A stretch of 64,000 nucleotides of DNA from Phallusia mammillata. Its lineage: Eukaryota. The notes under the pieces were generated by a model, which saw nothing but the letters and a program-made list of their open reading frames with translations, did no database searches and was not told the DNA's origin. The stretch covers positions 21,700,001 to 21,764,000 of the forward strand of contig OZ281498.1 in the NCBI GenBank assembly GCA_965637545.1, given 5' to 3'. Each line of letters begins with the position of its first letter. The stretch's first letter is position 1. Below, piece by piece: positions 12,101 to 37,922 of the stretch. The position numbers were made by a program, and so were the translations under genes.

Positions 12101-15100
12101 TATCAATGGCATGAAACCTGCGATTATTCAGGTTAGTAGTTGGACCGTTTTTCTCAAATAACTCAATAAACGGGCTTGATTTTGACCTAAAACCGAAAGT
12201 ACAAGTCCAAAACCGGCCCGAACCCGACTTTTTTTCAAAACTAATCCTGAAATATGCCTGTTGTTACAAATAACGCCGAGTGTAAAGTCATGTCCGAACT
12301 TGGTCTTATTCCGTTTCAAAAATCCAGCCCATTTTAACTCTGAACTGGAATACGCAGTTAACTGAAGCAAGAGAACCACCAACTCTGATATAGGCGACCT
12401 GTACAGGACGTCGAAACGTCGGTATAAAAATGCATTTGCCAGAAGAGCTCTATAAACTTGACATAACACCTGGCAACAATAGCTTATACACTAACCCTCT
12501 TTGTTTAGAAATATATCGAGGACCCACTTCTAATCGAAGGTTACAAGTTCGATCTCAGGATGTACGTTGTTGTTGCCCGCCTCAATCCAATAGAGATTTA
12601 CTTATGCAAGGTTCGTATAGAGTCAACACATACGTCTATAGTATATACAGTATAAAGATGGTACACAAAATTATTGCTCATAAACAGTTGCTTTAAATTA
12701 TTTCGCGCATGTTTCTATATGAGTGATCTTCAAATCGAGCCCTTACATGAGTCCGTGAACGGTTTTCGTGAGCCCAACACCATCTCACGACATTCACAAA
12801 ATATGTTTCCAACCCAAACTGTTTCATTACTTTTGTGAAGTCTGCGAATGGCCATGTGGAAGCAAAAACAAACCTATACATCCTTACATTAAGGACGGTC
12901 TTGCAAGATTGTGTACCGAAGAATACGAAATGCCGACATCGTCCAACATTCAGAAGACCTTCATGCACTTAACCAACTACAGCCTGAACAAGAACAGCGC
13001 CGGTTTTGTTTACACTAATGCTGAAGGCACTGGATCAAAACGCTCCTACCGCAGTGTTAAACAGGTTGAAAATGATACTATGTAAAACATAATTTCAGAT
13101 GTAGCAATGCGACCAGTTGTGCATTTTTGGTTTAATAATCACAAGGCTAAACAAGATTACACATACCTTAAATGACGAGATCTTATAGGAGTCGAATACG
13201 ATAAAATAGGTATCCGAATAAACGCATTAAAATATGGTGTGTTAACAAACAACAAGCCTAGTAGATATACTCAGTGGTGGGATTGAATTTTTTTGTCAGC
13301 CGGTTCTATCACAAAAGTCATATTTTTCAGCCGATTCTGTTACAAAAAGTCCATTGACAGTAACCAGTATATTGCTAACCGGTTCGCTGATCCCATAAAA
13401 TTTCGTGAGACAGTTATATAGAACCGGTGCGAACCGGCTGAATCCCACCACTGGATATACTGAACAAAACAAAAAGCACTTTATGTGTAGTGCTTCTCGG
13501 TATTTTATAAGTAAAGTTCGGTTCATCTCCAGTTGGATATTGTATCATTTTTCGGGTCTAATTCGTAACATTGTTTCGGTATAATGACGAACATGATATT
13601 TTTCGTCGTTTACACTTTTACTGAATTTACAACCTCAAGTTAAGGAATAAATTTATGTAAAATATTACTAAGCAGTATATTTTGTTAGTTGCTCAAAAAG
13701 AAAGGATACGACGTACATGAGATTGAGAGACAGATAAAAAACCTTGTTGTCAAGACAGTTCTCTCCATGCTTCCCGACATAACGATATGGGAACACGTGA
13801 CTAATAAGTCTAAACTTGTCAGGTATTATTTAACCTACTAACCAACTATATGTGTGTAACAATGCGTAATGAGAAAAATGACTTGGTTTATTCTTTTGAG
13901 TAGCGCAATTAAACACAAATTGAAAATTAAATTTGATTGTGTTTTTTTCAAACTCCGTTCAAGTTCGCGTTCTCACACAGGTCCTTTCAAATTCTCGGGT
14001 TTGATATCTTGCTCTCATCCGACATGCGAGCTCATCTTCTTGAGGTTAACTCGGCTCCGAGCATGGCCATTGATGCGGAACAGGAAAACGAAGAAGGAAT
14101 AATAGAGACTGTGACAAGTCACGTGGACGAACAGGTAGCTCTGATTGGTTAAGATCGGTGACACTTCGACCAATCGTTTAAGCTCGAGTCAAAACGATGA
14201 AAAAATCGTGCCCGTTTTAAATTACCAAAAACTTCTGGGCCAAGGGTCGCCAACCTTTACCACTCAAGGAGCCACTCGGGCCCTTTTTCATAAGTAAGTA
14301 AAACACAGAGAGCCACAAAGCCCTTTTGAATTAAAATGCCACTGCATGTAGCGTTTTTTTGCAATGTTGATTTTTTTCTTCGTTTAACACGCCACTATTT
14401 TGCCTATTTTGGACTTCACGTTTCATAGCATAGAAACGCGATTGTAGTGAACTACTAGAAGTAGTACGGGTCGTGCTTTTGCACTGTAATTTTCGTTTTC
14501 GGCTTTTGTGATCGGCATGGCATTCGCAATTGAATGTTGTAACCATTAAGTAATTACTAAAACTGTGCCGCATCCGAGGGATCCAAGGGCCGCGGGTTGG
14601 CTACCCCTGTTCTGGTGGAAGCACTGACTTCAACAATGGAATATTCGTAAAAATAAGCTTTTGTTTCGTAGATAAAAGTTCCTCTGCTTCGCGATTCGTT
14701 GCGTCTCGTTGCATACGGGGAGAGTGAAGTAAACATGGAAAAATCCTGTCTTGAGCGGGTGTATCCCCCAAAACGAGATAAGCAAGGAGTCGCAAAGACA
14801 AAAACAGAATCACCCAGAAAGGTCGAAAATCCTCCGGTAAAAGTCCACGAACGCAAGGAAACGATTAGGAAAGAAATTAGAGACTTAGAGGAACGGATCA
14901 AGGCTCAGATGAAAGTGGTGGAAAAATACAGGGTAAGGGCAAATTTAGATTGTAATTAATTGGTGGCAAATGTGCCCTGAATATCAAAATAATTTGCGAA
15001 ACATATGAAACAGGTTTCAAACGTGTTTTTGTCTTTACAGTTTTGTCTCATAACTTTATACTCATCGTTACACTTGTTCTAAAACATGACTATATAACAT

Positions 15101-17142
15101 TTGGAATATGCACCTTTTAGAAATACTACGAAGACAATGACACTTCAACAAACAATCACGGAGAACCTTACAACGATTACGGACAAGGTAAAAATTTAAG
15201 GCTAAATTACTGCTTCATTTTTGTGATTGACTTAACATATGAAAGTGTTCAAGCTTAAGTTTTTTTTTTATCAGAAACCGATATCCCACTTTCAAGTAGA
15301 TCACTGCCGGCACCAACCAACAACAGAAGATCTTACAGGTAAATTACCTCAAGTTTTTTATGGCAAAACTTGAAACTGCATGTAAAAATAGAGCGCCAGG
15401 CCATTCAATAGGCCTAGCTTACTATGATCCATACGTTTGTGTGTCGTGATCGCTGGTCTACATGCCATGAACGCTTTAGGGTTAATTACAGTTAGGAATA
15501 ATCGTTTTAGCTTAAAACTACCGATTGTCGTTTACGAAGGTAGTTTACCACGCAGGTTAAAAAAATGCAAAAAACAAAACTGAGAGCTTGTAATTACACA
15601 GTAAATACATTATATTGCAAAAGTTTCAACATTTTTGCAGTTGTCAACATCAGTGCAATCATCAGTTTTGCTTTTGATCAAGATTTTTGAACCTGTCTAC
15701 TGTGTTCCAAGGTTAAATTTTTTTATCCTTTTCAGAGACAATTTTGATACACCCCGTCCCACGCAAGCAACCCGACTCCAGTACACCACCAGGCGACCGA
15801 AAACTTTTACAGTGATCAAATATAAACAGGTAAAATAAGTTGTTGCGTGCAAACTGGCAGCTAACATCAAAAATTATTTTTATTTATTCAAGACGTATCT
15901 TCTATCTCATCATGTGTTTTACAGGAATACGCGATTTCCACCGACGAATGGCGCTTGTTTGACCCTAAACAGAAACCATGGCAACGGTCACCTATCCACC
16001 CAAGTCAGCAGCGTTCCATCAGCGTCTTGCCGAGCGTCGATAGAACGCAGGCGCAACAGAAGCCAAAAAAGCCGCCAGATAAAGTTTCAGACCACGAGTT
16101 ATTCAAGGGACTTCCCAAGTGCAAAATCTGCGGTTGCTTTGCAAATGGCGCGGGCCCTGGGCTTTACTACGCACAGACGGAATACAAAACCTTGACTGAC
16201 ACAAAAGCGATGCCCGTGAAGTCACTATGTGGGGTTGCAGAGCCCGTGGATGGCATTGATGGTGAATACTTTGATGAAGAACCCGGGGATGGATGGGAAA
16301 CGGATCGTGGAATGTTCGAGAAACAGCCGCTGCCTTTGAGGAGTATTTATTTCGGCGAAGCAAAGAGAGAAGAAGAGGAGGCAAATTTGCTCCGACGGAG
16401 GAGGATTTTGCTCGAAAGGGAAACTAATAACAACGAGATTCCACAAACCAAGGACTGCGAAGCAAATGATCATATATGTGACAACTGCTTTGACGTGGCG
16501 TCCTCTTCGTCATCAAGTGATGACGTAGATCTTAGGAGGAACGGTTTTTCGCTAGAGCGATTTCGTGCCAATCGAGACCGTGAAAGAGTAGTTCAGCAAA
16601 CAGATGCTTCAGGTGGTGCCATGAAAAAGCCGTTTGCCATGCGAGAAGTGATGTTGCTCAACCGAGCTGCTGCGGTTTTCATCTACTTCAACGGAATCAA
16701 GACGAGTCTTCGAATCAGCGCTACGGCGTTTCGCAACATGGCGCGTCGCTGCCGACTTTGCGAACAGGGTGCCATGCCTTCCATTGACATACTCTTTATC
16801 GACACCATGCGACACTGGCAGTGCTACGCACACGACCGCACTTCTCCATTTTACGACTCTTTTAAGGGTCGCAACCCCATCACAGCACACCAGCAGTCTG
16901 GGTTACCGTTTCAGGGTTTCGTCGAGGCCTTGTTCAAACTAGCGCAGACTCGTTTCAGGGGCGAAAACCTTAAGGAGAAAATGGAAGCGCTGATATCGAA
17001 CTGTGAGCTGTACATTCGCGAAGTCACCAAAGCGGACAAGAAAAAGATTCATGTCCCCGAACAGCCCTTGTCACATAGAAATCACGTAACCACTACTCCA
17101 CGTATTTCGGGGTCCCAGTCCCAGCGCCGTTCGTATTTCTAG
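9116..17142 (+). CDS. TTLL11: Tubulin polyglutamylase TTLL11, 14 coding exons, ~1036 aa
   Basis: Exons 9116-9338, 10280-10462, 10723-10835, 11330-11522, 11998-12131, 12509-12610, 12894-13064, 13689-13822, 13981-14134, 14672-14932, 15121-15187, 15275-15338, 15736-15829, 15925-17142. TTL motifs YIVKPDAGSQGEGIYL, KFDLRMYV, MHLTNYSLNK, FQILGFDILL..LLEVNSAPS. C-terminal IDILFIDTMRHW..GLPFQGFVEALFKLAQTRF resembles the TTLL11-specific domain. Confidence 0.9.
9850..10167. mobile_element. hAT-type MITE
   Basis: TIR CAGGGGTGGGCAACCT / AGGTTGCCCACCCCTG; 8-bp TSD CTTTAGAC. Confidence 0.9.
11820..11963. mobile_element. hAT-type MITE
   Basis: TIR CAGTGGTTCC / GGAACCACTG; TSD ATCTAACC. Confidence 0.88.
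13272..13453. mobile_element. hAT-type MITE (related inverted copy at 41418-41582)
   Basis: TIR CAGTGGTGGGATT / AATCCCACCACTG; TSD GATATACT. Confidence 0.9.
14241..14609. mobile_element. Degenerate hAT-type MITE
   Basis: Imperfect TIR CAAGGGTCGCCAACC / GGTTGGCTACCCCTG; partial TSD TTCTGG. Confidence 0.7.
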
Positions 17143-23900: not shown

Positions 23901-25092
23901 TTGCATTGAAACGCATCTGCAAAAAAAGTGAAATTACTTCATGGGTATTCGCACACATTGGATGTAAATTCGAAAATTTCACATGCCTAACGTATAAAGT
24001 TGGAATAGCAATTGGGTTTTGCATTGTCATGAAATATTAACGGCCCTGGTCTACGATGACAAGCGAATCGCATTTGTGGGAATATTACGGACAGGTTTAA
24101 GCATTCTGTTGCTTCGTTTCGAAGTTATACTAATGAGACATAGATAAGGTCTCCAACATCGAAGAGTAAATATCTACTATCAACCCGACCAAAGGTTAGC
24201 AAGTGCCATCTGTTATTTTTACACTGCAAGTGCTTTTGCATGAATTTCCACACACAAAAAAGCTTGTGTTTATCAACCATACACGGGTTTTAAGGTGTAG
24301 AATTTGTTTTATTTCACCTACTTTAAACAAAAAATCAGGGTCAGTGGACAAAGTTTAATATGAAATATACGTCAAAATTACTTCCAAATAAAAAAGTAAA
24401 AGGTTTTAGATAGCGTAGTGTTTACTGGAGATGTGCTATTCACTCGAATTTTTCCATCGTGGTCTTGGTAATAAACGCGCACTTTTATTTTAGTCCGGTC
24501 TATGGAACTGGTGGATTTTTTAATCAACGAAATGAACTTGTTTGAAATAGCGGAACTCGCGACCTTGATGTGCTGAAAAGTAATTGCACACCCGAAATCG
24601 ATATTCGTGATTGCGCGCGACTCCTTACGTAAAAATATTAATCAGGAAAAGCAATCCGAAGGGACAATGTAGAGAGGCAATGGACGGCGTTGACCCCCCG
24701 CTGGACAACACTTCATACAGGTTGGTAATTAACAGCAATAGTGTGGAGTGCATGGCCGTTCTCTCTCTCTCACTCTCTCCGGCCCTGCTGCTGGGTTTTT
24801 GTTACCACCGCGCCGTCAATAAGCTGGATCGGCAAAGGCAGATAGCCATATGCCGTCCGTGTCGCCGCTGCTAATAAAGATACAAAGCGGGAGGCGTTTG
24901 TCCGCGAAAGAGCAGAGCACTTTCTCTCTCTCTTTTCACAGCGGGTGCATACTTCGTTCAATGCAAGGGCACACGCGTGCTTCTAGCGAAATTATCTGTG
25001 CTCTCATGGGGCGAGCGGTAGAAAAAAAGGGGACGAGGCTTTGAATGAAATAAACAAGAAGCGGTGCAGATGTTTCACTAGCCGGCGTTCCC

Positions 25093-25099
25093 TATAAAA
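25093..25099 (+). promoter_or_regulatory. TATA box of the miR-124 host transcript
   Basis: CTATAAAA ~30-35 nt upstream of Inr-like CCATCGCAGTT, followed by an exon ending in AAG|GTAAGC. Confidence 0.65.
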
Positions 25100-26940
25100 C
25101 GGCAGCGGTCCATTGACTAACCATCGCAGTTTGCAATCAGCACTCAAACAAGCAACATCCACGGGAGCAAGATTTAAACAGCAAAGGTTTTGTGGCGAGG
25201 CGCGTTTTCAACGCTGAAAAATGAAAGATGGAAGAGATAAAGTGGATGTCTTCAACGGGAAGTGCAAACCTAAGGTAAGCTTCTGCAAGTGTTTATACGC
25301 ACTAATTAGCGCAACCTGAAGTATAACTTCCTAAAAATGATCTCTTATATAAAGAATTTCGCAATGTGCGATAACCTCTCAAGACCTTTCGCATTTAGTT
25401 ACCGTGAGCACCGTGCACTCTAATATAATAAATTTTACGAGAAACTTAACAGAATATTCGTATTAACCAACGGTCTAACGTGGTTTTACATAAGATGACT
25501 TATAGCATCGGGCAAAACAGGTGGCGCGCCGCTGGTGGGGTAACAGCCGAAAGACGCACGATTTTGGGTCGATATTGCGAAGTGAGCGGCACATTCCGAA
25601 AAGTGCGACGTTGCATAATTGATAAGCAAGCCTAAATGTCACTTGCCAAAGAAGGAAACGGGAGTTCCTTCCCAACCAGCCGACGCTCACGTACAAACTG
25701 TCGGCTGTGGCCGCCCGTTGCCACCAGCAACCGATGAATAATTGATTTAAATGCTCTGACGTCACCATAGAGCCTTGCAACGGCTTCACTAAATCATTAG
25801 AGTCGCCTGAGCCGTTTTTCAAAAGTCAAACTTCGAGCCGCTTCTATAAAAAGACGTTTTAAAAGGAAAGGGGTCGTTGAAAGCTTTCTTGGATAGGCGC
25901 TTTTAAATCTTGGTGCTAGTGGTGGTCAAGAAAGGTCGCCTTTCGAAATCGGAAAATGCCATCCGAAACTTTAATTAATTAAAATAGAAAAATGTGTTTA
26001 CAGCACAAGCCAATTTAAAACGCCTAAGCGACATAGAATTATCAGATTATTTATCGTTATCTTTCTTTCGACAGATGGCAAACTGTAGATCAAGCCGATG
26101 ACATAAGATGGAAAGCTGCGAACAAACGGTAAGTTTAGATTTTTTGCAACAGTTCTAGCACGCCCAAATTTAACTGCCAAGGACATTTGTACTAAATCAA
26201 TAAGCGCAAATGCAAAGGACATGTGCTTATGGTCTGGCAGGTGAAAACGGCAGTTTCAGCACCAGGCTGCTTGCACTAATTGGGTACAGGGACAGCTGCT
26301 TTACGCTTAAAAATACCAGTCGTACCCGTTCGCCCACATAGAGAAACATGTGTATGTAAGCAAAAAATCGATACTTGCACATTGTGTAGTTCACAATTGT
26401 ATTTTAAACCAATACCCTGGCACATGTTTAATTCTAAACGATTTGAACTTGAAGCGGTGGTAATAATAAGCGCAGCTGATTTTAATCAAAAATTAGATCA
26501 TTGGTCCGTAAAAGTAAATTTTAAAATAAGGCCAAAGCCATTTAGTTTCTATTTTCGCACCATAAACAGAAATCACAAGAAACCAATTAGCCCAGAATTA
26601 AGTTCCTCGTAGGATACGAGGCTCTAATAAGACGCTGTAATCTTTGCTGGTATACTGTACTCTCTCACAGCATCCAACGAACGATTTCATTGTTTTAAGA
26701 CGCGTGACCATTGTCCGCGTATTCTATAGTTTGGCCGCAAGCAGGACGTCTCTACAATTCGCTGCGTGATAAGTTTATTGTCTTTAAAGCCCGCAATTAC
26801 AGAACATGGCGAAAAGCAAAAGAAAAAAGTTGCCCCGATCGGTATAAATCACGCCTCCTAGCAAATAAAATCATTCCAATCATTGGAGTTGATCTAATCA
26901 GCAAGAATACTGGCAAAATGATTGGTTGTTGCTAATGGCA

Positions 26941-27013
26941 TGTTCCGTGCGTATTTAGTGTGTGATCCTTACTGTTTTATACAATAAGGCACGCGGTGAA
27001 TGCCTGCGGAACA
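26941..27013 (+). ncRNA. mir-124: pre-miR-124 copy 1 (mature 26985-27006, UAAGGCACGCGGUGAAUGCCUG)
   Basis: Exact 20-nt miR-124 core on the 3' arm; flanks TGTTCCG / CGGAACA close the hairpin. Confidence 0.95.
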
Positions 27014-27119
27014 CTGCTACGTACATCACCAACCAAGCAATGGATGTAGTAGATGAATTTGAGGCAGTTAAGCCCAATTATAGTGGAAACAGGGCCAGGC
27101 TTGACTGCAAAAAACGGCA

Positions 27120-27189
27120 TGTTTTGCTCGCGTTTGCTGTGCATCTTACTGCGTTTGCACTAAGGCACGTGGTGAATGCCTGCGAAACA
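27120..27189 (+). ncRNA. mir-124: pre-miR-124 copy 2 (mature 27161-27182, C10U variant UAAGGCACGUGGUGAAUGCCUG)
   Basis: 19/20 match to the miR-124 core with intact seed; TGTTTTGC / GCGAAACA close the hairpin. Confidence 0.9.
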
Positions 27190-27294
27190 CTGCCACTTAC
27201 AACACTAACCAAGCACTGGTTGTAGTCGTAGATGAATTTAGGGCCTTTTAGCCCAACTCTATAGGAGCAACAGAGTTGACTGCAAAAAACGACA

Positions 27295-27364
27295 TGCTTT
27301 GCTCGCGTTTGCTGTGGATCTTACTGCTCTTGCATTAAGGCACGCGGTGAATGCCAATAAAGTA
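27295..27364 (+). ncRNA. mir-124: pre-miR-124 copy 3 (mature 27336-27357, canonical UAAGGCACGCGGUGAAUGCCAA)
   Basis: Exact canonical miR-124-3p; 5' arm CGCGTTTGCTGTGGATCTTA resembles miR-124-5p; TGCTTT / AAAGTA close the hairpin. Confidence 0.95.
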
Positions 27365-28331
27365 CTGTCATAATCTTCATGTGAGAAATATAGATTCAGT
27401 TTGGAGTCTATAAAGCTGACACAGCCAATTTGTACCCTATAGGCTAGAATACATTTGGCCGTATTATTGAAAATAAGCTTTTAAAAAACCATACAAAACC
27501 AGGAACACACATTTTCCTGTAGATGTATTTTTCCACACAAAAAAACTTGGTCTTGCTTACCTTTCAAATGAATAATCCTGATTAGCTGGTTAAAATTGTG
27601 TTTCTTTTTTTCAGGTTTGAGACCCGTTGAAGTAAGTTCCAGCCTACCTCGAACGGCTCACAGAGCACCGTTCTTCGTTTCCTGCAAGTTCCAGCCTTTA
27701 GCAATCCAGCTTTAAGGCAACTGCACAACTCAACAACAACTTACAGAACCCAGCGTTGACCCAACAATCAATTTGTAGTCAGCATTGTGCGTTTGACAAT
27801 CACTCAGTTTAGACTTTTTTCCTAAACAATTCTGCGTTTATTCGTAAACAATACCTGGTTAAAAGTTAAGACCGGACATTTTGTTTGATAGCATGCCCAT
27901 AAACTAGTTTAAGAATACTGTTTTAAAACCACTTTTCTTCATGTAATGTATCATATTGCTTTCTCCCTTGAGTTCCAACAAACAAAGGTTAACTTTGGTT
28001 TTGTAAATTCTTGATGTATTATAATTATGAGTGTTGTCTAAGTGAGAACTAATATTTCTGCCACCAACTTCTTCAACTAGCTATCATGTCTGTTCATGAG
28101 TTCCATTCCGCTCCGTTTGGGAGCTCACCTTTGTATATGGCACGTGACTTTAGTCTACAAGCAGCCGTGCTCGCGTTTGCTGGTACACTCACTGTGAATC
28201 TGTGCTTTGCAAACTAAATATTGCAAAAAAACTACATTTTGATCTTAAATTTTCTGCCGTTTTGAGATTAAATTTATGTTTAGATTTGTACAAAGTTAGA
28301 AAACCTTTCTTTTGTGTGCTTCACTGTGAAA

Positions 28332-28440
28332 TGTAAATACTTTACCTTCTTGGATCAGTGCAATACTATCTGTACATACATACTGTATATACTTTTATAT
28401 CAACCTTGTACATATACTTTTGCGTGGAACTATGTAAATA
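28332..28440 (+). promoter_or_regulatory. Cluster of five Pumilio response elements (UGUAHAUA)
   Basis: TGTAAATA 28332, TGTACATA 28371, TGTATATA 28384, TGTACATA 28407, TGTAAATA 28433. Confidence 0.6.
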
Positions 28441-29281
28441 AACTAACCATAATAAAAGGATAGTGCTTCTATATTGGAGACCGCTTGTCGTTTGGAGAAC
28501 TTGGGCAGTCAACTAGTCATAAATTATGCAGAAGTAATGAATCACTGAAATGGATGTGGTTACATGCGGTATAAGAGTAAAACAATTAATTGCGTGAGTC
28601 AGGTCATAAAGATCAACTGTAAATGCGTAGAAAAAAGGTTTTGAAAATAGATAACATGGTAAATAATTATTTTCTTTTTAATCGAATACCGAACCCAAAT
28701 CTTTGAAATAAAAGCTTGCAACAAAAACGGTTTGATTTTTCCATAAAATTATTTTTTTTGTTCACTTTAACGTAACATTAAGAAGAAAAAGATCAATAAT
28801 TTTACGGTTCATAAAATAGCAAGCGGTTGTCCTACAATCTGTGCTTTACTGGTTTTCTGGCATTTTTGACGACTTGTTTTAAGTTCCCATCATATAGTAC
28901 AAAAAAACACGTTCTAAATTTAAACAAAAGAAAACGAACAAGCGGTACAAACCTAATTTGAAAATACCACAAACATAACCCGTGTTTTGAATTATGCAAA
29001 ACTTATTCGTGTAAAATGGCAGTGACAGCTGTTTAGCACTCTGAGAATTGTTTCTCATATAGGCAACTTAATATTGGTTCAAACACTTACACAAAAATTT
29101 ACACATAAAACAATATTATGTAACTTAGTTGAAACCTTTTTCATGTACAGAACGATTTTCTCCTGTTTGTAATACCATAAAAATTCCACTTACTAACGGT
29201 GCCTACGTTAAAGGTTGAGCAAACACGCCCAGTACTTTACATTAAACACAACACCACCAGCCAATCATGTCAGCTTCTCAT

Positions 29282-32200
29282 TCACAAATCCGTTTCATCA
29301 CAATCCCACTCCATAAAGTCGCTTGCTTCCTCGATGACGTCACTGCCTCGAAACGGAATGACGTATTCTATTGGGTTTGGACACTTGAGGGCGTTTGGCT
29401 GTTGTGGAGTATGTCGTGATTGCGGGGTTGAGGATAACGAGGAAATTATGCTTCCACACTGTGCTGCCGTACTGTCATTGGACGACATTGTCGCATATCC
29501 GTCTTCTTCAGTTTCGCAAAAATTGGTTATAGTGTCGCCACTAGAGACGCTCCCGTGCTCTTTGTCCCAAGTTACAGTCCCTTGCGACGTCGAATCGCTT
29601 TCTGATGATTGGTCGTCGTCCTGGCTGCACCGGGAAGCTCCGAACGGGGCTGCACCAGTTGGGACTTTATCGGATGTTGCTGATGCAGAGTACTTATGAC
29701 TGATCTTTTGCATCTCTTGCAGCATCGTCCTTTTGATTTCATCTTGATGCTGAACGAGCGATCGCAGAAAATAATCCGAAGCGCTCGGGATCACGCTCGG
29801 ATTGGGTGAAAGGTCAACACGTGACTCTTCCACTTCCGTAATCCCGCTAGTCATGTGATTGCTGGCCCTTTCCGCCTCATTGAGATTAAAGGTAGGGAGA
29901 TTTTTAGTTTTCTCGTTTGCGCGAGCCGCGTGAATTGGATAGTTCTTCACCGGGGTGCTAGACAGAAAAATGTCGTGAGGACCAATGACATCATCAAGAT
30001 CGTCGTCGTTTTGTGGCGGGAGATTTTCCACAAGCGGTGCACGAGAGCCCGAAGCAGTTTGATCTTTTAATGCGACTTTGTGAGGAATGACGTCATGAGT
30101 ACTAATTTCCGTTTGATATGAGTTTACTCTCGTTGAAATGAAGGCAGATTTATGAATTAGTGGGTCATGGTCCAACAAAGAATTTGATTTTTGGTCTTTT
30201 TGGATCGTATAAACTGTTTTCACCTCGGTCTGCTCGCTAGGTGTCTCTGTTTGAGCCTTGTCATCTAATTCAGCTAAATTTTCATCCGGCCAAAGATTTT
30301 CATAGTTCGGTTCGCATTTTTCCGGTTTTACTTGAGCTTTGTTACGTTCCTGCAAATTCTTTTTCATGTGTTGGAGTCCAGCTACGCGAGCATACGATGG
30401 ATTATCGCCTCGATTTTGTACTCTTGACTTTATGAGGCGGTGAAATTTTCGCGATGACGTCACTGAGTTGGCTGTGCTTGAGGCATCGGACTTTATCTTG
30501 ATGTTTTCCAAAGTGGAGACTTGGTTAGTGGTTTGAATTTCTTTCTCGTTTTGGTCGTTGGTCGGTAACGTTTCAGGTTTCAGCGAAGACTGAAAAAGAT
30601 TTATTTAGGTTGGGTTTGCTGTTTCTCAAGAACACAAACTTTTCGAACAGGCAGCTGATATTGGTTTATTTCTTTAATGCTAAAACTCTAGTTATACCCA
30701 AAGATTGTACGCATGATTTGGTCTGAAAAAATTTCCCCTTTTTTCGTTTCGATTGCACATGGTAAATGGTTATGCTGGTGTTTCAACTTAAACCTTATGC
30801 GTAAGTTGACCACTGTCCTGGTGACATATTACAGTTTTTTTTAAGACCGCTTCCACTACACATTGTTATTTTTTCTGATTTGTTCGTAATACTAGCGTAT
30901 ATTAAAGCACCAAAACAAACAAAACATAAAAACAAAGTTATATTATCACAATTGTTTTGGTGTATGCTAAGTTATGTTGTACAGTTTTGCGTTGATAAAG
31001 CTAATCGAGCAATAAATCAATAGAAGACAGTGAATAAACAAACAAAAAACTCAAGCTTACGTCGTTCACAATTTCTTCATTATGATCATACTGTTGCTGG
31101 TTGCTTGCAAGGTCGCTAAGTTTTTCCAAGCGCAGAATCCTCGTCCTCATCCGATGAAGAAGGCGATCGGTTCTCGCACTCCTACTCCTGTCGCAGCCGA
31201 TGAACGCCATTAGTTAGTTATTTGTTAATGTTTATAGTATTCTAGGTCTGTTTCCAGGCAGCAAATTCACTGTTCCTGAAAATGTTATATTCTCTTGTTA
31301 AAATAGACCTATATTTGTTATACTGTCAACTCGGCTCTCAAACTCAATTCACCTCAATCAACAAACTCCTCCTACTGCATCTGAACGATCCTCGTATTGC
31401 TGCTCTGTATCGAATTGTGAAACAACTGATGGTTACTTTTTACTGACCTCTCGATCTTTGTTAATAAGACTGTAATGCTTTCGAATCTTGTAGGCTATAA
31501 AATTAGATTGTTTGGTCTACAAGCTGACAATGAACAAATTTGCTTCTGTCTTTTAAGGCAAAAGTATTTTAAGACTTTCAACTCCTCTGCTGTCTTGACA
31601 AAGCTATTGTGTTTCTTTCATCCCACGAATTGAAACCACGTAGCAAAGAATATTGTCTGCTCTGCAAACTGACACTGATACGTTCTGAAGTTGTACTTCA
31701 CAGCATATATGCTTTGGATGGCATATAAATTCAGAAAATGAGATCAGGCGACAAAGGAAACTTACCTCGAGACTCGTCTACTGGTGTTGACTTTGTCTTC
31801 GCCTAAACACAACAAGCTCGATTCAATATTTCAGGAATTTAAGCAGATGTTTGGAAAAAGGCCAAGCTAATAGTTTAATTCCTACTCTTCACAAATCATT
31901 AAAGGTGTATGACGAAGTTTTTTGTTTATTCCCTTTATAACTTATATACAATCAAAATGACTCATACTCAACAGATTTAGATAAAAAACATACAGAAGTG
32001 AATAAAGGTATGAAATATTTCATTCAACCTTAAACGCAAAAGTTGGACTAAAATGCAATAAATTGTAGGGGATAGTCCTACTCGGATTTTAAACAGCGAT
32101 TTATTTTAAGAAGTTGCCTAATAAAGGCTAATAATGGTTTCGTGGATTTCTAGCAACCTACTATCTTCACTTTAGAGTGATCATAATGATGATATTTATT

Positions 32201-35200
32201 CATATTTTTTATATTTTACCTGTGGTTTTGTAGGAACTGAAGATGCCAGTTAAGGAAAGTATCTATATTCCATGTAAATTTATTGACTGATTCGGTTACT
32301 TGAAAAATATTTTCGATCCTTATTTATCCTTACTTTTGTATTTATCGCTAATTTTCATAGGGCTCAAATGAATCGAAGAAAGGTCTGAATCACTAAAGCA
32401 ACGACGTGGTTGAAATGGCGACGGCCCAGCTTGTTTTATCGGCGAAGGCTTCGGTTTGGGATCTGGCGGTGCAACCACACTAGAGGGCGCTGTGCTGGTC
32501 TCGGGCTCTTGTGCACTGAATGCAAATATTTTGTTGATTTTATCAAATACAAATTTACAGGTACAAAAAGCATGCAAAAATTAAAAATATATGTGACTAA
32601 AGTTTGATAAAACAGCAGCATGTCCTTTAATGGTGCAGAATGGGGCAAGTCTAATCCTTTTGAAATATTTATAAATCAATCGACTATGTATTTGCATATT
32701 GCACAGCGATTGCAAAATTTTCAATCATTTCTACGATATTGAGTGAAGCTATTTCACATTAAACTCAATTTAAAGTGGTATTATCGTTGAGAAAAGAATA
32801 AAGCCTTTTCCTCGTTTGCAATGATAATTTTACCCCCACTTAGCTGATGCAATCTTCTTAGCTTATATAGTCTTTATATTGCAATATAACTTTCACTTAT
32901 AATAACCAATACATGAAATTATTTGCAGACAACGAAATTAAAAGATTTAGGCATATACCTTTCTTCGACGTTGCAATGTTGGGGTACGTCGCTAGAGGGC
33001 GATAAATCACCCAAAAGTTTCTCTCTGGTTGGGGAACTTTTCTTTTTAGGAATTCCGGTAGCAAAGCGTAAACATTGCGCCATGTTACGTACTGGTGATG
33101 ACGTAGATATGTACGGATAATTTCGTGCAATGACCTCAGGAATCTGAAACGCAAGTACATTTTTAACGTAAATATTAGTAGGCTGTTAAAATATGTACAA
33201 AACTAAACTCCGTTTGTGACAAAATTCTCACTACAATTTGTTTTGTAGCTTAAAATAATCTTCAACTAAGAGTCCTAAGCATTGTCTTATAAAGGCATCT
33301 TTCCCAGTTCAGACCAATTGATATAAAAACTCAGAGAAAAAAGCGAAAATTACCGATAAAGTTATTGGCTACTAGAGAAGGAAATGTTAATGTCTGAATC
33401 TTTTCTTAAGAAATCCTGAACTGTCAAAAACTTCCCAACCTAAAAAATCTCGACTTAATGCACATCTACTTGCCTTGTCCGTTGCAACTCCAGTTAACAC
33501 GAAAGTTCGACCAAACGGCAAATCTTCACAACATGAAGAAGATTTGGCATGAAAGTTTCCTCTGCTTGGGTTATCTTCTCCTAATCAAAACATTAGCAAG
33601 TTTCAAATAGTACAAAAGTAAAAGGTCATTAGCATATAACAGTATTCAGCTGGGTATATGCTATAACCCATAACCCATAGTTCGTAAAAACAAAATTAAA
33701 AAAATGAATATCTAACTTTTCAAAGAGTTTTCTGAAAAAAAGACTAAAACGAAAATACGAACTAAAACACTTTCTTTGACGATTTTAATGCGTTTTTTCA
33801 GATTTGTTTGACTTTACATGCCTTTTCAAAGATGTAGAAACCGTGCAAAAACCTTAATTTAAGCAAGGGCCTGTAGACCTAAATATATACATCAGACGCC
33901 CAAAATGGTTAGAAACATCCGGCAAAGCAACATGTTCTTAAACTTATTTTTCCGTATAACCAACCGCTAACCTATTTTCATGGCGTCCAGCAACTCTGTT
34001 TCAACACTTAAGGTTCGATCCAACAATATCCCGTCCGATCTTGTTCTTTTTCTGCGATCCAACTCGAGATTTTTTGGCTCGTTCTCGAGGGACATTATTT
34101 TCACAGGTTTTGCGAAGTGACCACTTGTTTCAGGCGGCTTTGCTGCATCTGTACGAGTGAATTTAGTTCAGTAATTTTTCTACAAATGTGTTACAAACAT
34201 CTTCACAAAAACAACGCCCTAAAATAAAATAAAAGCATGTGTCCAATAATTCTTGAAGTGTGAGGAACAGATAAGTTTGAAGATCAAAAAAATAAATAAA
34301 TCAATTTTTCTTTGACTCACATCACGCCAGGCCTGCAGTACAAAATACCTTAATTAACATTAGATTAACCCAACCTTTAACGCACTTCGGTACAGCAAAG
34401 CAAAACTGTTAGCCTGTGGTGAAGTTTAAAACCACGACAGTTGGGCACATACAAAAAATCACAAGCAAATAATTAAATTAAAAACCTTTTTCCTCTGTAT
34501 TTGTTTGTGGTTGGTTAGAATGTAGACGAGTTCCCACAAACGAGGATTCGACTAACTTTGGTTTGGGTTTAATTGAAGAAGTTTCGTCTTTCCGATTTCT
34601 TATTCCCCTTCCGGACAAACATGAATATTGGTACGATGATGAATCCCACTGGGGTACGCCGTTCTCAACTGGTATCTCTTCTCTGACGAAAGATATGACA
34701 TAAATAAAGCTGCGGAGCTCACACAGCAGATAGATATTTGTTTTGTTGGATATTTGGTATTCCAATAACTATTCCAATAACACTATTCTGAGAATAATAA
34801 TAAAAAAAAGAAGATATTTTTTAAGAATTTATTTTACTGCAAGTAGGGGTGTCCAGCTCTTAAAACTCTTTCTTTTGACTCAATGGGCACAATAGCCACT
34901 TTGAGTCAAATAAGAACCTGAAATGCGAACGGCAGTAGAAAAATGTTCTATGCCATGTTCTATGTGTTCATGATTGCTTGGGCGATAAAATCAAAAAAAG
35001 CCTTGTTCTTTAAATATTTGTTCGTTCAATTGAATGTATGTCCGACATGCTTGGCAAAAAACGGTGCTAGTTTTCTTTTACAAAACGTCGTTTGCCTTCA
35101 ATAACAAACTACGTTAACGTTAATTGGTGGAAAAAAAAACAGCCATACGTTGTTCGGGCGGCAACTTACTTGGTTTGAATGTGTACAAGAACTTTGCGCT

Positions 35201-36293
35201 GCTCCGATTTACGACGAGGATATCGTTCATAAACGTTGATCTCATCCATTTTACGACTGTCGACTTCGTCTTTGCTCGTCGCAATAGAAATATTATCAAC
35301 ATCCGCCTGCAGTAAGATTTCCATGTTTGTTGAGACCGCCCTCCGTTTCTTGCCCTTTTCATCCGATTTTGATTTTCTTGCGAACAGATTCTTAAAACTT
35401 AACATTGATCGACTGCGGCGCAAAACAGGAGCTTGTGGGTTCGATTCTAGTCTCTCGTCAAGAAGATTATCAGCAGATGAGCACGTTGCTTTTGCTTGCT
35501 CCGTTTTTAATTTGTTTCTCGCTGGTTTGGCTGGCTTCGTTTTGCTTTCTTGCGCCTTAGCTGATATTTCAGTTACATTTTTATCTTCGCTAACGGCCGC
35601 CAAAGGCACACAAGGTTGCTGTGATGTGTTCTTAACATCCGGACAGCGTCTAGGACTGATTCCCATTTGTGAAAGCTGGTTCTGCTGGCGTAAGGATTCA
35701 ATACAGTCCATGGAAGCTGATTTGTGTATATGCAGCGGCCCGACACCGGAAAAAGACACCGATTTTCGGATCGCCGATCTTAGCTTGGAGCGCTCATGGA
35801 AATCGTTCAACTCCACCTTAAGTGACGGGTCCTTGGCTTCGTTGAGGGACTGCTCGTCGACGATGATGACACTGTCTTCCGCGAAGTACGCACTGCGGTG
35901 TTTTGATTTTAAATTACCGACGCCCTCGACATGCTTTTGCCTTAAAACGGATCGATTGGAGCAAGCAACGTCGGACTTGTGTCTCGCAACGGTCGCTTTA
36001 CTTTCGCCAAGTTTTCTTTTTTCTTTCTTTTTGCTTCCCGAGGAGAAAATCGACTTCCACCACCTCCTCTTTCTCACCTCCTGCTCCGCTTTGCTCTTCT
36101 TGTCGCTTTTCTTTAAACTTTCCTTTTTTTCATCTTGTTTTGTTTTCGACGCTTGTTTTTTTGATGAAGCTTGACTTATTCCATTGCTGAGGTCATTGCG
36201 AGAGCGATGGATAATTGTGGAACTTCTTGCGTCGGCGGAACGGCAAGTCAGGAAACCGTAGTCATCGCAACCGTTGTACGTAATAATAGACAT
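29282..36293 (-). CDS. Uncharacterised low-complexity protein, 9 exons, ~1147 aa, C-terminal ETDL
   Basis: Exons 35170-36293, 34486-34682, 33972-34148, 33474-33580 (GC donor), 32959-33143, 32334-32515, 31766-31802, 31061-31187, 29282-30589 join into one open frame. S/K/E/P-rich; no domain recognised; start codon uncertain. Confidence 0.75.
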
Positions 36294-37922
36294 AACTAAC
36301 GCATGTAAAAAAATTCCCGTTCTCACGTGATCATACTGTCTTTAAAGGGAAACTTAGCAAATATTTTACTGCAAATAAAAGGTTCTTCCCAGCCTTTTTT
36401 TCAACAAACAAAAAATAAATAAGCTTTAGGTATGAACCATAACTATTGGGCATTCACGTAGTTTACCTAAAACCGGATTTTTGCTTTAATGTTACTGTTG
36501 TAAAACATAAAAAAGAACATCATACAGTTTAACTGTCAGCCAATGTTCAATACATTTTAAAGTTTAAGAATAATTGATTAGCTTAACCGAAGCACAAATA
36601 TAAATTTAAATTAGTTCATTTATTCAATTTAATCTCTAAATTAGTTTTTCTCTGTCCTATTTAAAGTCAAAATATTTCGATACTTAGTAGGCTAAATATA
36701 CTATGTCAGCACAAACACATTGCTGGCACACATCACAACAAAGTCTGAAAAAACTTCTTCTTTCATTATGAAGTATAGGATCGATAATCTGGCGCGGCAA
36801 CGAGGTATGGAGCGCCTAATTTAAGGGCCCTTGGACGAGATAATAGGAGATCTCTACCTACATTTCTGTTACACAGTCAAAACTAATCAATAACAGACAC
36901 TGAGTTAAAAGCTATAATGAGTCTAACGATACGGCATTACTGAATATTTTTCTTTATATATATAATGTTATTTAACTGTATACTCAATACCGTACCTTAG
37001 TGTGCTCATTGTACTGTGTTTCTATTAAATATTCTCTTTGTAACGACCAAACGTAATTCTGTATAGGACTGTAAAGTTTTAGACTACTCTAAAAACCAAA
37101 AACTACGTCCAAATATTACAGTGCACACAAGGTAACGTATGGTTTGTCACACAAATCTAGGGATTAAGGACCTTTTTGTATTCGAATCATACCATTAGTG
37201 TCCATCGCGAATGGTCGAGAGAACTGCACTTCCTCTCAAGCCTTTATTGTTTCCACAACCAACAGTTTAAACTCTCACTAACATTTTTCTAATTACAACT
37301 TAGTTAAACCTCATCAAATGTTCAACCAACTAGGAAGCAAAACAACCCAACGCCAGCCAAGTTAATCCTAATGTTCCAAAGGTATTGTGACATCACAACA
37401 TGTCTTTCCAAAAGGCCAAGTGAAGCAAATATGACTCTGTTAGCTAAATACAGTCTTTCAATAGACTTACAAAGAATGCAGTTTGGGGCATAAAGTATTG
37501 TGTAGCACTTGGTGAGACGTAGTTTTGAGGGCACTCATCGCAATCGAATGCCATTGTTTCGAGCCTATGGTTCACGCTCAACGAGCCAGCAAAATTGTGC
37601 AAGTCGATTGGTAAGATTTTGTTTGAAACTTACCGATCAATAGACTTCACAATTTTCTTTGATTAAAAAGTGAACACAATTTTTTCTTGATATTGCATTT
37701 GAAACTGTTACTACTTTTTTAAAATACAACGCGTAAATACACATTTAAAAGTAACTTTGGGAAATATTTGGTTGTATTCTACGTTTGGTGCCTTTTAAAA
37801 ACGGTAATTATCAAACATTTCTTTTTAAAAGTAAATAAAGCACCTTAAATGCGGCAGGACGCATTACCCCAATTTAAAAAAATAAATTATGTTGGGCCTA
37901 TCTTTAAATTATTCCCAGCACC

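What the first reader, a model, noticed from the sequence alone, without database searches (positions are those of the whole stretch)
28332..28440. Five Pumilio elements in 110 nt at the 3' end of the miR-124 host RNA
Seen: five perfect UGUAHAUA motifs immediately before or overlapping the AATAAA signals, plus a miR-92/25-type 8-mer GTGCAATA at 28358. Known: PUM proteins bind UGUAHAUA, and the PRE-dense lncRNA NORAD sequesters them. Inference: the spliced host may be a dual-output neuronal RNA, releasing miR-124 from its intron while the exonic RNA acts as a Pumilio decoy or a tightly repressed micropeptide mRNA. This is my best candidate for an undescribed system in the window, but it rests on motifs alone.
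Basis: partly seen in the sequence, partly recalled or inferred. Interest (0 to 1): 0.75.

Follow-up and report, generated by a model that had tools for sequence, protein, structure and literature searches.

The report
Pumilio sites ending miR-124 host RNA
A sea-squirt gene that makes the neuronal microRNA miR-124 ends its spliced RNA with five perfect binding motifs for the RNA-binding protein Pumilio, an exceptionally dense cluster that probably controls the fate of that RNA, though binding itself is untested.

Summary
Five perfect TGTAHATA motifs lie on the + strand at 28332-28440. No composition-preserving shuffle reached five. Genome-wide, only one tandem array is denser.

Spliced contigs from 4 runs of 4 studies place the cluster in the last ~135 nt of a 1,058-nt three-exon RNA. 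Its second intron holds the genome's only three mir-124 hairpins. This is the layout published for Ciona Pans/miR-124.

The genome encodes a canonical Pumilio. Its own presumed 3'UTR carries seven of the same motifs.

My best reading (0.5) is a cis-acting Pumilio module beside the poly(A) tail that limits the stability or translation of the host RNA. The A/U-rich flanks and closeness to the tail fit repression better than a NORAD-like decoy.

The rivals are CFIm UGUA polyadenylation enhancers, a decoy, a CPE/PBE module and local duplication. Binding, effect and conservation in other tunicates could not be tested.

The scan had already noted the host gene on this window, but not the Pumilio cluster.

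Verdict: a new member of a known kind, interest 0.42.

The parts
25123..25274 (+). Exon 1 of the host (Pans-like) RNA. The 5' end at 25123 is marked by adapter-like loose letters in run X4.
   Evidence: tables 5, 7 and 8. There is no ATG in 25123-25220.
25221..26101 (+). 26-codon ORF split over exons 1 and 2: 18 codons at 25221-25274, 8 codons at 26075-26098 and a TGA stop at 26099-26101. The stop lies 27 nt before the last exon junction.
   Evidence: each exon translated separately.
26075..26128 (+). Exon 2
   Evidence: GT..AG joints that skip 800 and 1,486 nt, seen in 4 of 4 runs.
26943..27362 (+). Three tandem mir-124 hairpins (26943-27011, 27122-27187, 27297-27362) inside intron 2 (26129-27614).
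   Evidence: Rfam RF00239: 43.5, 38.4 and 50.6 bits; these are the only three matches in the genome.
27615..28468 (+). Exon 3, the terminal exon of about 852 nt, almost all of it 3'UTR. Contigs end at 28443, 28448, 28466 and 28471.
   Evidence: table 8. Single-copy in the genome.
28332..28339 (+). PRE 1, TGTAAATA
28358..28365 (+). GTGCAATA, a single miR-92/25-type 8-mer. Not significant.
28371..28378 (+). PRE 2, TGTACATA
28384..28391 (+). PRE 3, TGTATATA
28393..28398 (+). TTTTAT, a CPE-like hexamer and the only one in exon 3
28407..28414 (+). PRE 4, TGTACATA
28433..28440 (+). PRE 5, TGTAAATA, overlapping the first AATAAA
28437..28456 (+). Two poly(A) signals, AATAAA at 28437-28442 and 28451-28456
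   Evidence: Contig ends lie 10-15 nt after the second signal.

Best explanation
The five UGUAHAUA motifs form a real, single-copy, non-random cluster in the last ~135 nt of the spliced, roughly 1.06-kb RNA of an ascidian Pans-like gene. The second intron of that gene yields miR-124. The most likely mechanism is cis-acting Pumilio control. Once the spliced RNA is in the cytoplasm, the species' canonical Pumilio protein occupies several of the five sites next to the poly(A) tail. As established for PUM proteins elsewhere, it then promotes deadenylation, decay and/or translational repression. The exonic product, with its 26-codon ORF, would therefore be short-lived or silent, and its level would follow ongoing transcription of the miR-124 locus.

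Shown here: the motifs, their statistical rarity, their presence in the mature RNA, a canonical PUM gene, and use of the same motif in PUM's own presumed 3'UTR.

Inferred: PUM binding to this RNA and the direction and size of the effect.
For: Motifs and rarity. No shuffle reached five: 0 of 20,000, 20,000, 20,000 and 5,000. No simulation out of 200,000 had three or more. All 5 of 5 TGTA in the cluster are full 8-mers, against 20 of 741 elsewhere in the window.

Genome-wide rarity. A triple-PRE pattern gives 77 rows in 240 Mb. Two are this locus, 34 show a 31-nt satellite unit, and 41 were fetched. Among the fetched rows only one 15-nt tandem array exceeds five per 110 nt, and the next non-repeat loci have four. 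The pattern PRE-PRE-AATAAA gives 42 rows genome-wide, 3 of them here.

In the RNA. Spliced contigs in 4 of 4 runs from 4 studies cover 27615 to 28443-28471. Exon 3 has one genomic copy, so the spliced form is not a retrocopy in this assembly.

Accessibility. The last 200 nt fold no better than shuffles (z = +0.55), and the centroid structure is almost unpaired.

A reader exists. There are six PUF-repeat matches at C7:4157781-4164453. Exon translations match PUM1/PUM2 homology domains at E = 1e-39, 1e-35 and 1e-10.

Positive control for motif use. Seven PREs lie on the sense strand within 1.7 kb after the PUM stop codon. The 10-kb locus has 9 matches against 2.08 expected, and 0 of 200 shuffles reach 9.

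Architecture. Flank GC is 25-40%. Passages of PMC11602169 state that more PREs and A/U-rich flanks give stronger PUM repression.
Against: No binding or functional data exist for this RNA. Conservation in other tunicates could not be tested because every route failed or was closed.

Three of the five motifs share the extended flank ATACTTT, seen as short direct repeats D1 and D2. Local duplication may therefore have produced part of the cluster, which means fewer independent events.

The UGUA cores lie 35-136 nt before the RNA end. That is where CFIm sites are expected, so 3'-end processing could be the selected function.

The spacings of 31, 5, 15 and 18 nt differ from the 8-12 nt optimum reported.

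Contigs cannot fix the exact 3' end, and the runs are RNA only by the tool's guess, although GT..AG joints and template-switch-like adapters argue for cDNA.

The spliced contig has much higher word depth than the intron pieces. The tool warns that depth is a poor measure, but if real this does not suggest a very unstable RNA.

None of 80 metagenome contigs from unknown animals that carry mature miR-124 has two or more PREs in any 150 nt within 4 kb downstream. The link is therefore not general to mir-124 loci.
Confidence: 0.5

Rival explanations
1. The UGUA cores are upstream enhancer elements for cleavage and polyadenylation, bound by CFIm (CFIm25/NUDT21 with CPSF6). Together with two AAUAAA signals they would make a strong terminator for a heavily transcribed gene whose neighbour converges on it. 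The match to the Pumilio 8-mer would be secondary.
For: Four of the five UGUA start 35-97 nt before the contig ends, and the fifth starts at 136 nt. There are two AATAAA, at 28437 and 28451. A CFIm25 gene is present (PF13869, 269 bits). Passages of PMC10476966 state that CFIm binds UGUA to promote 3'-end processing and that multiple UGUA within 100 nt of the cleavage site are functional. A minus-strand gene has its last coding exon at 29282-30511 and a candidate ATTAAA at 28677. That leaves only about 200 nt between the two gene ends, which is inferred rather than shown.
Against: CFIm needs only UGUA. It does not explain why 5 of 5 UGUA extend to HAUA when the background rate is 2.7% (P about 1e-8). 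It also does not explain why the 7 other UGUA of exon 3 do not extend. The two functions are not exclusive.
Confidence: 0.2
2. The spliced host RNA acts in trans as a Pumilio decoy or sponge in neural cells, as NORAD does. Transcription of the locus would then raise miR-124 and lower free Pumilio at the same time.
For: There are five perfect sites on one RNA, which in Ciona is a strong pan-neural in situ marker (passages). The spliced contig has high word depth in 4 of 4 runs (with the tool's caveat on depth). The RNA is almost non-coding, with a 26-codon ORF.
Against: There are only five sites in one 109-nt block and no repeat units. The A/U-rich flanks and a position 35-136 nt from the RNA end are the opposite of the features named for NORAD in the passages: relatively G/C-rich flanks and a 3' module that keeps the PREs away from the tail. 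No copy-number data exist. PUM's own presumed 3'UTR has no miR-124 7-mer site, so a coupled circuit through miR-124 is not indicated.
Confidence: 0.12
3. The cluster is a Pumilio-binding-element plus CPE module for cytoplasmic polyadenylation, as in Xenopus cyclin B1 mRNA. It would set the poly(A) length and translation of the short ORF.
For: One TTTTAT lies at 28393, 44 nt before the first AATAAA and between PREs. That PBE + CPE + hexamer within about 100 nt forms such a code is recalled from the literature and was not read here.
Against: There is a single CPE-like hexamer in a 29%-GC stretch, which is plausibly chance. The gene is zygotic and neural in Ciona, not a stored maternal mRNA. CPEB was not looked for.
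Confidence: 0.08
4. The cluster has no selected function. It would be a by-product of small local duplications in an A/T-rich 3' end.
For: Short direct repeats link three of the motifs: a 12-nt pair at 92% and a 10-nt pair at 100%. Exon 3 also carries a decayed fourth hairpin unit, so the region has a history of duplication. No conservation data exist.
Against: The repeats are only 10-12 nt, TRF finds no array, and self-similarity is like that of other non-repeat loci (0.42). Two motifs, at 28371 and 28433, fall outside both direct repeats that link PREs (D1 and D2). Even three motifs in 109 nt occurred in 0 of 200,000 simulations. All five keep the full 8-mer.
Confidence: 0.1

Closest known systems
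Ci-Pans / miR-124 host gene of Ciona (KH.C7.140)
   Same: It is a three-exon, nearly non-coding gene with a very short ORF and tandem miR-124 hairpins in the second intron. This rests on passages of bioRxiv 10.1101/2023.12.20.572557 read, and for this locus.
   Different: This locus has three hairpins and a 26-codon ORF, against two hairpins and 22 amino acids reported for Ciona. No published statement about Pumilio elements in Pans was found: 0 papers hold Pumilio + Ciona + miR-124. Sequence orthology could not be tested.
Ordinary Pumilio-regulated 3'UTRs, including PUM's own mRNA
   Same: Both have perfect UGUAHAUA 8-mers on the sense strand of a 3'UTR in an A/U-rich context. The same genome's PUM gene has seven in about 1.7 kb after its stop codon.
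   Different: Here five motifs are packed into 109 nt directly at the poly(A) signals. The carrier is a miRNA host RNA with only a 26-codon ORF.
NORAD lncRNA (mammalian Pumilio decoy)
   Same: Both are non-coding or nearly non-coding RNAs with several PREs (NORAD features from the passages and the listing).
   Different: NORAD has many PREs spread over 12 repeat units, relatively G/C-rich flanks and a 3' module that distances the PREs from the tail. Here there is one 109-nt block, A/U-rich flanks, and a position adjacent to the tail. No homology was tested.
CFIm UGUA upstream elements of poly(A) sites
   Same: Both have several UGUA within about 100 nt upstream of the cleavage site (passages; distances).
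   Different: CFIm elements are defined by the 4-mer only. Here every UGUA carries the full Pumilio 8-mer.

Membership tests
Pumilio-regulated 3'UTR (PRE cluster) | Consensus UGUAHAUA on the transcript's sense strand | tested here: met
   Five perfect 8-mers on + and none on the minus strand of the region.
Pumilio-regulated 3'UTR (PRE cluster) | The motifs lie in the mature RNA, downstream of the stop codon | tested here: met
   Spliced contigs in 4 of 4 runs cover all five motifs. The stop codon is at 26099-26101.
Pumilio-regulated 3'UTR (PRE cluster) | The organism encodes a classical PUM homology domain | tested here: met
   One search gives six PUF matches. Searches match PUM1/PUM2/Drosophila Pumilio structures at E = 1e-39 to 1e-10.
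Pumilio-regulated 3'UTR (PRE cluster) | Pumilio binds the RNA and represses it in a PRE-dependent way | not testable with these tools
   This needs CLIP/RIP and reporters.
Pumilio-regulated 3'UTR (PRE cluster) | PREs conserved in orthologous 3'UTRs | not testable with these tools
   No tunicate sequence could be reached.
NORAD-like Pumilio decoy lncRNA | Many PREs spread over repeated units | tested here: not met
   There are five PREs in one block, no tandem repeat and no PRE elsewhere in the RNA.
NORAD-like Pumilio decoy lncRNA | PRE context that limits decay: relatively G/C-rich flanks and distance from the poly(A) tail (as worded) | tested here: not met
   Flank GC is 25-40%. The motifs start 35-136 nt before the RNA end.
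NORAD-like Pumilio decoy lncRNA | Abundance high enough to compete with the cellular PRE pool | not testable with these tools
   Contig depth is no measure of expression (tool note).
CFIm-dependent poly(A) site | UGUA motifs within about 100 nt upstream of the cleavage site | tested here: met
   Four of the five start 35-97 nt before about 28468.
CFIm-dependent poly(A) site | CFIm25 present in the genome | tested here: met
   PF13869 match of 269 bits at C5:24591459-24592016.
CFIm-dependent poly(A) site | Site usage depends on CFIm and on UGUA | not testable with these tools
   This needs knock-down and poly(A)-site competition assays.
Pans/miR-124 host gene | miR-124 hairpins in the second intron of a spliced gene with a very short ORF | tested here: met
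   compared with the description.
Pans/miR-124 host gene | Sequence orthology or synteny with Ciona KH.C7.140, and pan-neural expression | not testable with these tools
   No Ciona sequence or expression data could be reached here.

The most novel reading that the evidence does not exclude
The exonic RNA of the pan-neural miR-124 host gene is itself a functional Pumilio-binding RNA. One transcription unit would then deliver two post-transcriptional regulators: miR-124 from the intron, and a Pumilio-titrating or Pumilio-gated RNA or micropeptide message from the exons. This would couple miRNA output to Pumilio activity in chordate neurons.
Probability: 0.12. Interest if true: 0.7.

Novelty: new member of a known kind. 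Interest (0 to 1): 0.42.

Why it matters
miR-124 is the archetypal neuronal microRNA. The spliced remains of its host genes are usually treated as by-products or as in situ markers, and Pans is used that way in Ciona.

Here the host RNA carries the densest non-repeat Pumilio-motif cluster of a 240-Mb genome, right at its poly(A) tail. That suggests the exonic RNA is actively handled by a second neuronal post-transcriptional regulator.

If the sites are bound, ascidian embryos offer a simple electroporation test of how Pumilio treats a miRNA host RNA, and of whether PUM and CFIm compete for the same UGUA cores. If the sites are not conserved, this is just one more Pumilio target.

Tried and rejected
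Cross-species conservation (the key missing test):
- The last coding exon of the convergent neighbour (29282-30511, minus strand) gave no homologue by word search: 2,835 candidates, none scored.
This ended the plan to reach orthologous loci through neighbouring proteins.
- Six small ORFs of exon 3 are not in the protein collection, 0 of 6. I therefore did not spend a homology search on them.
- A metagenome scan for two mature miR-124 copies 160-190 nt apart found 0.
- The single-copy pattern found at least 119 contigs, of which the tool fetched 80. All have one match, none has a second near-copy within 400 nt, and none has two or more PREs in any 150 nt within 4 kb downstream. PRE density was 0.136 per kb on the sense strand and 0.128 per kb on the antisense strand.
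- The genome-contig scan gave one contig, filed under a bacterium. I did not open it.

A miR-124-to-PUM feedback loop was rejected for now. There is no GTGCCTT or TGCCTTA in the 10 kb that contains the PUM C-terminal exon and its downstream sequence, and none in host exon 3.

A coding explanation for the motifs was rejected. A 49-codon open frame (28314-28463) spans the cluster, but it starts with GTG, has no ATG, and is not in the protein collection.

A transposon or dispersed-repeat origin was rejected, because exon 3 matches only itself.

The context of the two other four-PRE loci (C2:16689789 and C8:7054398) was looked at and is inconclusive.

The search of earlier findings found no note with the word 'Pumilio'.

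Literature. No paper holds Pumilio + Ciona + miR-124. The listings for Pumilio + ascidian (44 papers, 15 listed), Pumilio + miR-124 + host gene (59 papers, 15 listed) and Pumilio + microRNA host gene + lncRNA (7 papers) show no title on this subject. I saw listings only. I opened no supplementary files, so the supplementary figures and tables of PMC11602169 on spacing and flanks were not seen. Alfano 2007 and Chen 2011 were not read and are cited only through.

Full report
**1. What is in the sequence**

The + strand carries five perfect TGTAHATA motifs, at 28332, 28371, 28384, 28407 and 28433. The gaps between them are 31, 5, 15 and 18 nt. The last motif overlaps an AATAAA at 28437, and a second AATAAA lies at 28451. 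A single GTGCAATA lies at 28358 and a single TTTTAT at 28393.

**2. Is it more than chance?**

The window has 25 motifs on both strands against 12.6 expected, and 0 of 100 shuffles reach 25. Apart from this cluster, no 110-nt stretch on either strand has more than one.

Dinucleotide-preserving shuffles never reached five, and the maximum was three, with means of 0.08-0.12. This held for the 109-nt segment, the last 200 nt and the last 400 nt (0 of 20,000 each) and for all of exon 3 (0 of 5,000). A first-order Markov simulation trained on the last 400 nt gave two or more motifs in 0.0165% of 200,000 trials, and never three or more.

In the window 746 TGTA occur, and 25 of them extend to the 8-mer. 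Outside the cluster the figure is 20 of 741, or 2.7%. In the cluster 5 of 5 extend (P about 1.4e-8), while the 7 other TGTA of exon 3 do not.

The stretch is not a tandem repeat. It does contain two short direct repeats, of 12 nt at 92% and 10 nt at 100%. These link three of the motifs through a shared ATACTTT flank. Exon 3 matches only itself in the 240-Mb genome.

**3. Genome-wide rarity**

A pattern of three PREs with gaps of 30 nt or less gave 77 rows in the genome, 45 forward and 32 reverse. The backwards-read control gave 106 and 272, so such triplets are not generally enriched.

Of the 77 rows, 2 are this locus. Another 34, which I did not fetch, show in their printed letters a 31-nt satellite unit, which can hold at most four motifs per 110 nt. 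The remaining 41 rows were fetched and counted.

Among the fetched rows, only a 15-nt tandem array at C2:1413247-1413404 has more motifs (6 per 110 nt, self-match 0.94). Four per 110 nt occur in satellite or tandem loci and at two non-repeat loci, C2:16689789 and C8:7054398. All the rest have three.

There are two caveats. The pattern needs a core of three motifs with both gaps at 30 nt or less. The tool also states that repeat counts are lower bounds.

The pattern PRE-PRE-AATAAA (gaps of 30 nt or less) gave 42 rows genome-wide, 3 of them here.

**4. Where the cluster lies in the RNA**

Rfam finds three mir-124 hairpins, at 26943-27011, 27122-27187 and 27297-27362. They are the only three in the genome.

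Of 20 listed public runs, 19 hold the stretch 27616-28480, 17 of them with half its words or more, from 6 studies. None is on record as RNA, and the tool's label is a guess.

I laid four runs from four studies on 24300-29800. Each of the four has a contig with two GT..AG joints, skipping 800 and 1,486 nt. This gives the following exons:
- Exon 1: 25123-25274
- Exon 2: 26075-26128
- Exon 3: from 27615 onward

The contigs end at 28466 (X1), 28471 (X15), 28448 (X4) and 28443 (X9). Nothing is laid between 28532 and 29800. The X1 contig is 1,058 nt, which is exactly the three exons.

In X4, adapter-like loose letters of the template-switch type precede 25123, which marks a 5' end. That reading of the adapter is recalled, not tested. 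Because exon 3 has a single genomic copy, the spliced form is cDNA rather than a retrocopy in this assembly.

All five motifs therefore lie in the mature RNA. They start 136, 97, 84, 61 and 35 nt before about 28468. Contigs cannot fix the true end, so the cleavage site is approximate.

**5. The host gene**

Exon 1 has no ATG before 25221. From there 18 codons run to the exon end. Exon 2 continues with 8 codons and a TGA stop at 26099-26101. That gives a 26-codon ORF whose stop lies 27 nt before the last junction. I handled the exons separately and did not build or search a joined model.

Passages of bioRxiv 10.1101/2023.12.20.572557 describe Ciona robusta Pans/miR-124 (KH.C7.140). It has a 22-amino-acid predicted product and two tandem miR-124 copies in the second intron, and is expressed in the neural lineages. 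The locus here has the same build, with three hairpins. The dual-output gene is thus already known. What is not in print in the searched library is any link to Pumilio (0 papers; listings).

**6. Possible readers of the motif**

The genome has one locus with six PUF-repeat matches, at C7:4157781-4164453. Translations of three of its exons match solved PUM1, PUM2 and Drosophila Pumilio homology domains at E = 1.4e-39, 1.4e-35 and 1.7e-10. In the printed alignment, repeat residues are nearly identical.

After the stop of the C-terminal exon (L051 710-907), seven PREs lie on the sense strand within about 1.7 kb, before an AATAAA at 2661. The 10-kb locus has 9 motifs against 2.08 expected, and 0 of 200 shuffles reach 9. 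That the 1.7 kb is the 3'UTR is inferred. That PUM mRNAs of other animals carry PREs is recalled. This is a within-species sign that the 8-mer is in use.

A CFIm25 gene is also present, so the UGUA cores have a second potential reader.

**7. Mechanism**

The last 200 nt fold no better than shuffles (z = +0.55, centroid almost unpaired), which suits single-strand binders. The flanks of the five motifs are 25-40% GC.

Passages of PMC11602169 report four relevant points:
- More PREs give stronger binding and repression.
- A/U-rich flanks make PREs more potent.
- Spacings of 8-12 nt work best.
- NORAD combines many PREs in 12 repeat units with relatively G/C-rich flanks and a 3' module that may distance the PREs from the poly(A) tail.

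The present cluster is small, has A/U-rich flanks and abuts the tail. It therefore looks like a repressive cis element rather than a decay-resistant decoy. I put cis-acting Pumilio control at 0.5 and the decoy at 0.12.

The main rival (0.2) is that the UGUA cores serve CFIm-dependent 3'-end formation. Four of the five lie 35-97 nt from the end, two AATAAA follow, and a convergent gene ends close by. This rival does not explain the full 8-mers, and the two functions could coexist.

A PBE/CPE cytoplasmic polyadenylation module (0.08) rests on one TTTTAT. A neutral duplication by-product (0.10) is hard to square with the statistics, but it cannot be excluded without conservation data.

**8. What could not be done**

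The 80 fetched metagenome contigs with an exact mature miR-124 come from unknown animals. None shows a PRE cluster downstream. This argues against a general bilaterian link but says nothing about tunicates.

I took no contig for human. I only counted motifs on L052-L131, and I left L171 unread. I opened no supplementary files.

**9. Verdict**

Its placement in the mature host RNA is shown. The Pumilio reading is plausible, with a reader present in the genome, but binding, effect and conservation are untested.

It is best filed as a new member of a known kind, a Pumilio-type 3'UTR element, in a noteworthy carrier. Interest is 0.42. The bolder reading of a bifunctional miR-124 host RNA has probability about 0.12.

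Noticed in passing
window 27358 (run X4, tables 7 and 8): A contig begins at 27358 directly after adapter-like template-switch letters. That is one base after the 22-nt miR-124-3p of the third hairpin (27336-27357 by my count). It looks like the 5' end of the downstream Drosha cleavage product of the intron. There is one contig, at depth about 6.
   Followed up: partly
window 28163-28215 (exon 3): This is a decayed fourth copy of the mir-124 repeat unit. The 5' arm letters align with copies 2 and 3, but the mature miR-124 part is deleted (alignment A1). The terminal exon therefore partly derives from the same tandem duplication.
   Followed up: partly
G000:C7:4165300-4167100 (L051 960-2576): Seven PREs lie on the sense strand just after the Pumilio gene's stop codon, including a pair two bases apart. 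This suggests Pumilio autoregulation in this species. There are no miR-124 seed matches there.
   Followed up: partly
G000:C5:24374240-24784506 and scattered loci on C2, C3 and C6: A 31-nt satellite family has units that each begin with a Pumilio-type 8-mer. It accounts for most triple-PRE matches in the genome.
   Followed up: no
L171 (NZ_KQ410734.1, filed as Shinella sp. SUS2, 196,523-nt scaffold): A scaffold filed under a bacterial genome holds an exact 20-nt mature miR-124. It is probably animal DNA contaminating the assembly. I did not open it, because its origin could be mammalian.
   Followed up: no
window 29282-30511 and 35166-36326 (minus strand): Large serine/lysine-rich open exons belong to a gene converging on the host gene. 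They have no Pfam family and no word-search homologue for the last exon. A candidate minus-strand ATTAAA at 28677 would leave about 200 nt between the two gene ends.
   Followed up: partly
window 13937-14152 (+): This exon has a tubulin-tyrosine-ligase domain (PF03133, E = 1.4e-8). It points to a TTLL gene upstream of the host gene, whose likely last exon is the 395-codon ORF at 15955-17142.
   Followed up: no
G000:C2:16689775-16689836 (minus) and G000:C8:7054398-7054470 (+): These are the only other non-repeat loci with four PREs per 110 nt. The first is followed by AATAAA after 16 nt. The second lies about 2.9 kb downstream of exons that look fibrinogen-like by eye; I did not test them.
   Followed up: partly
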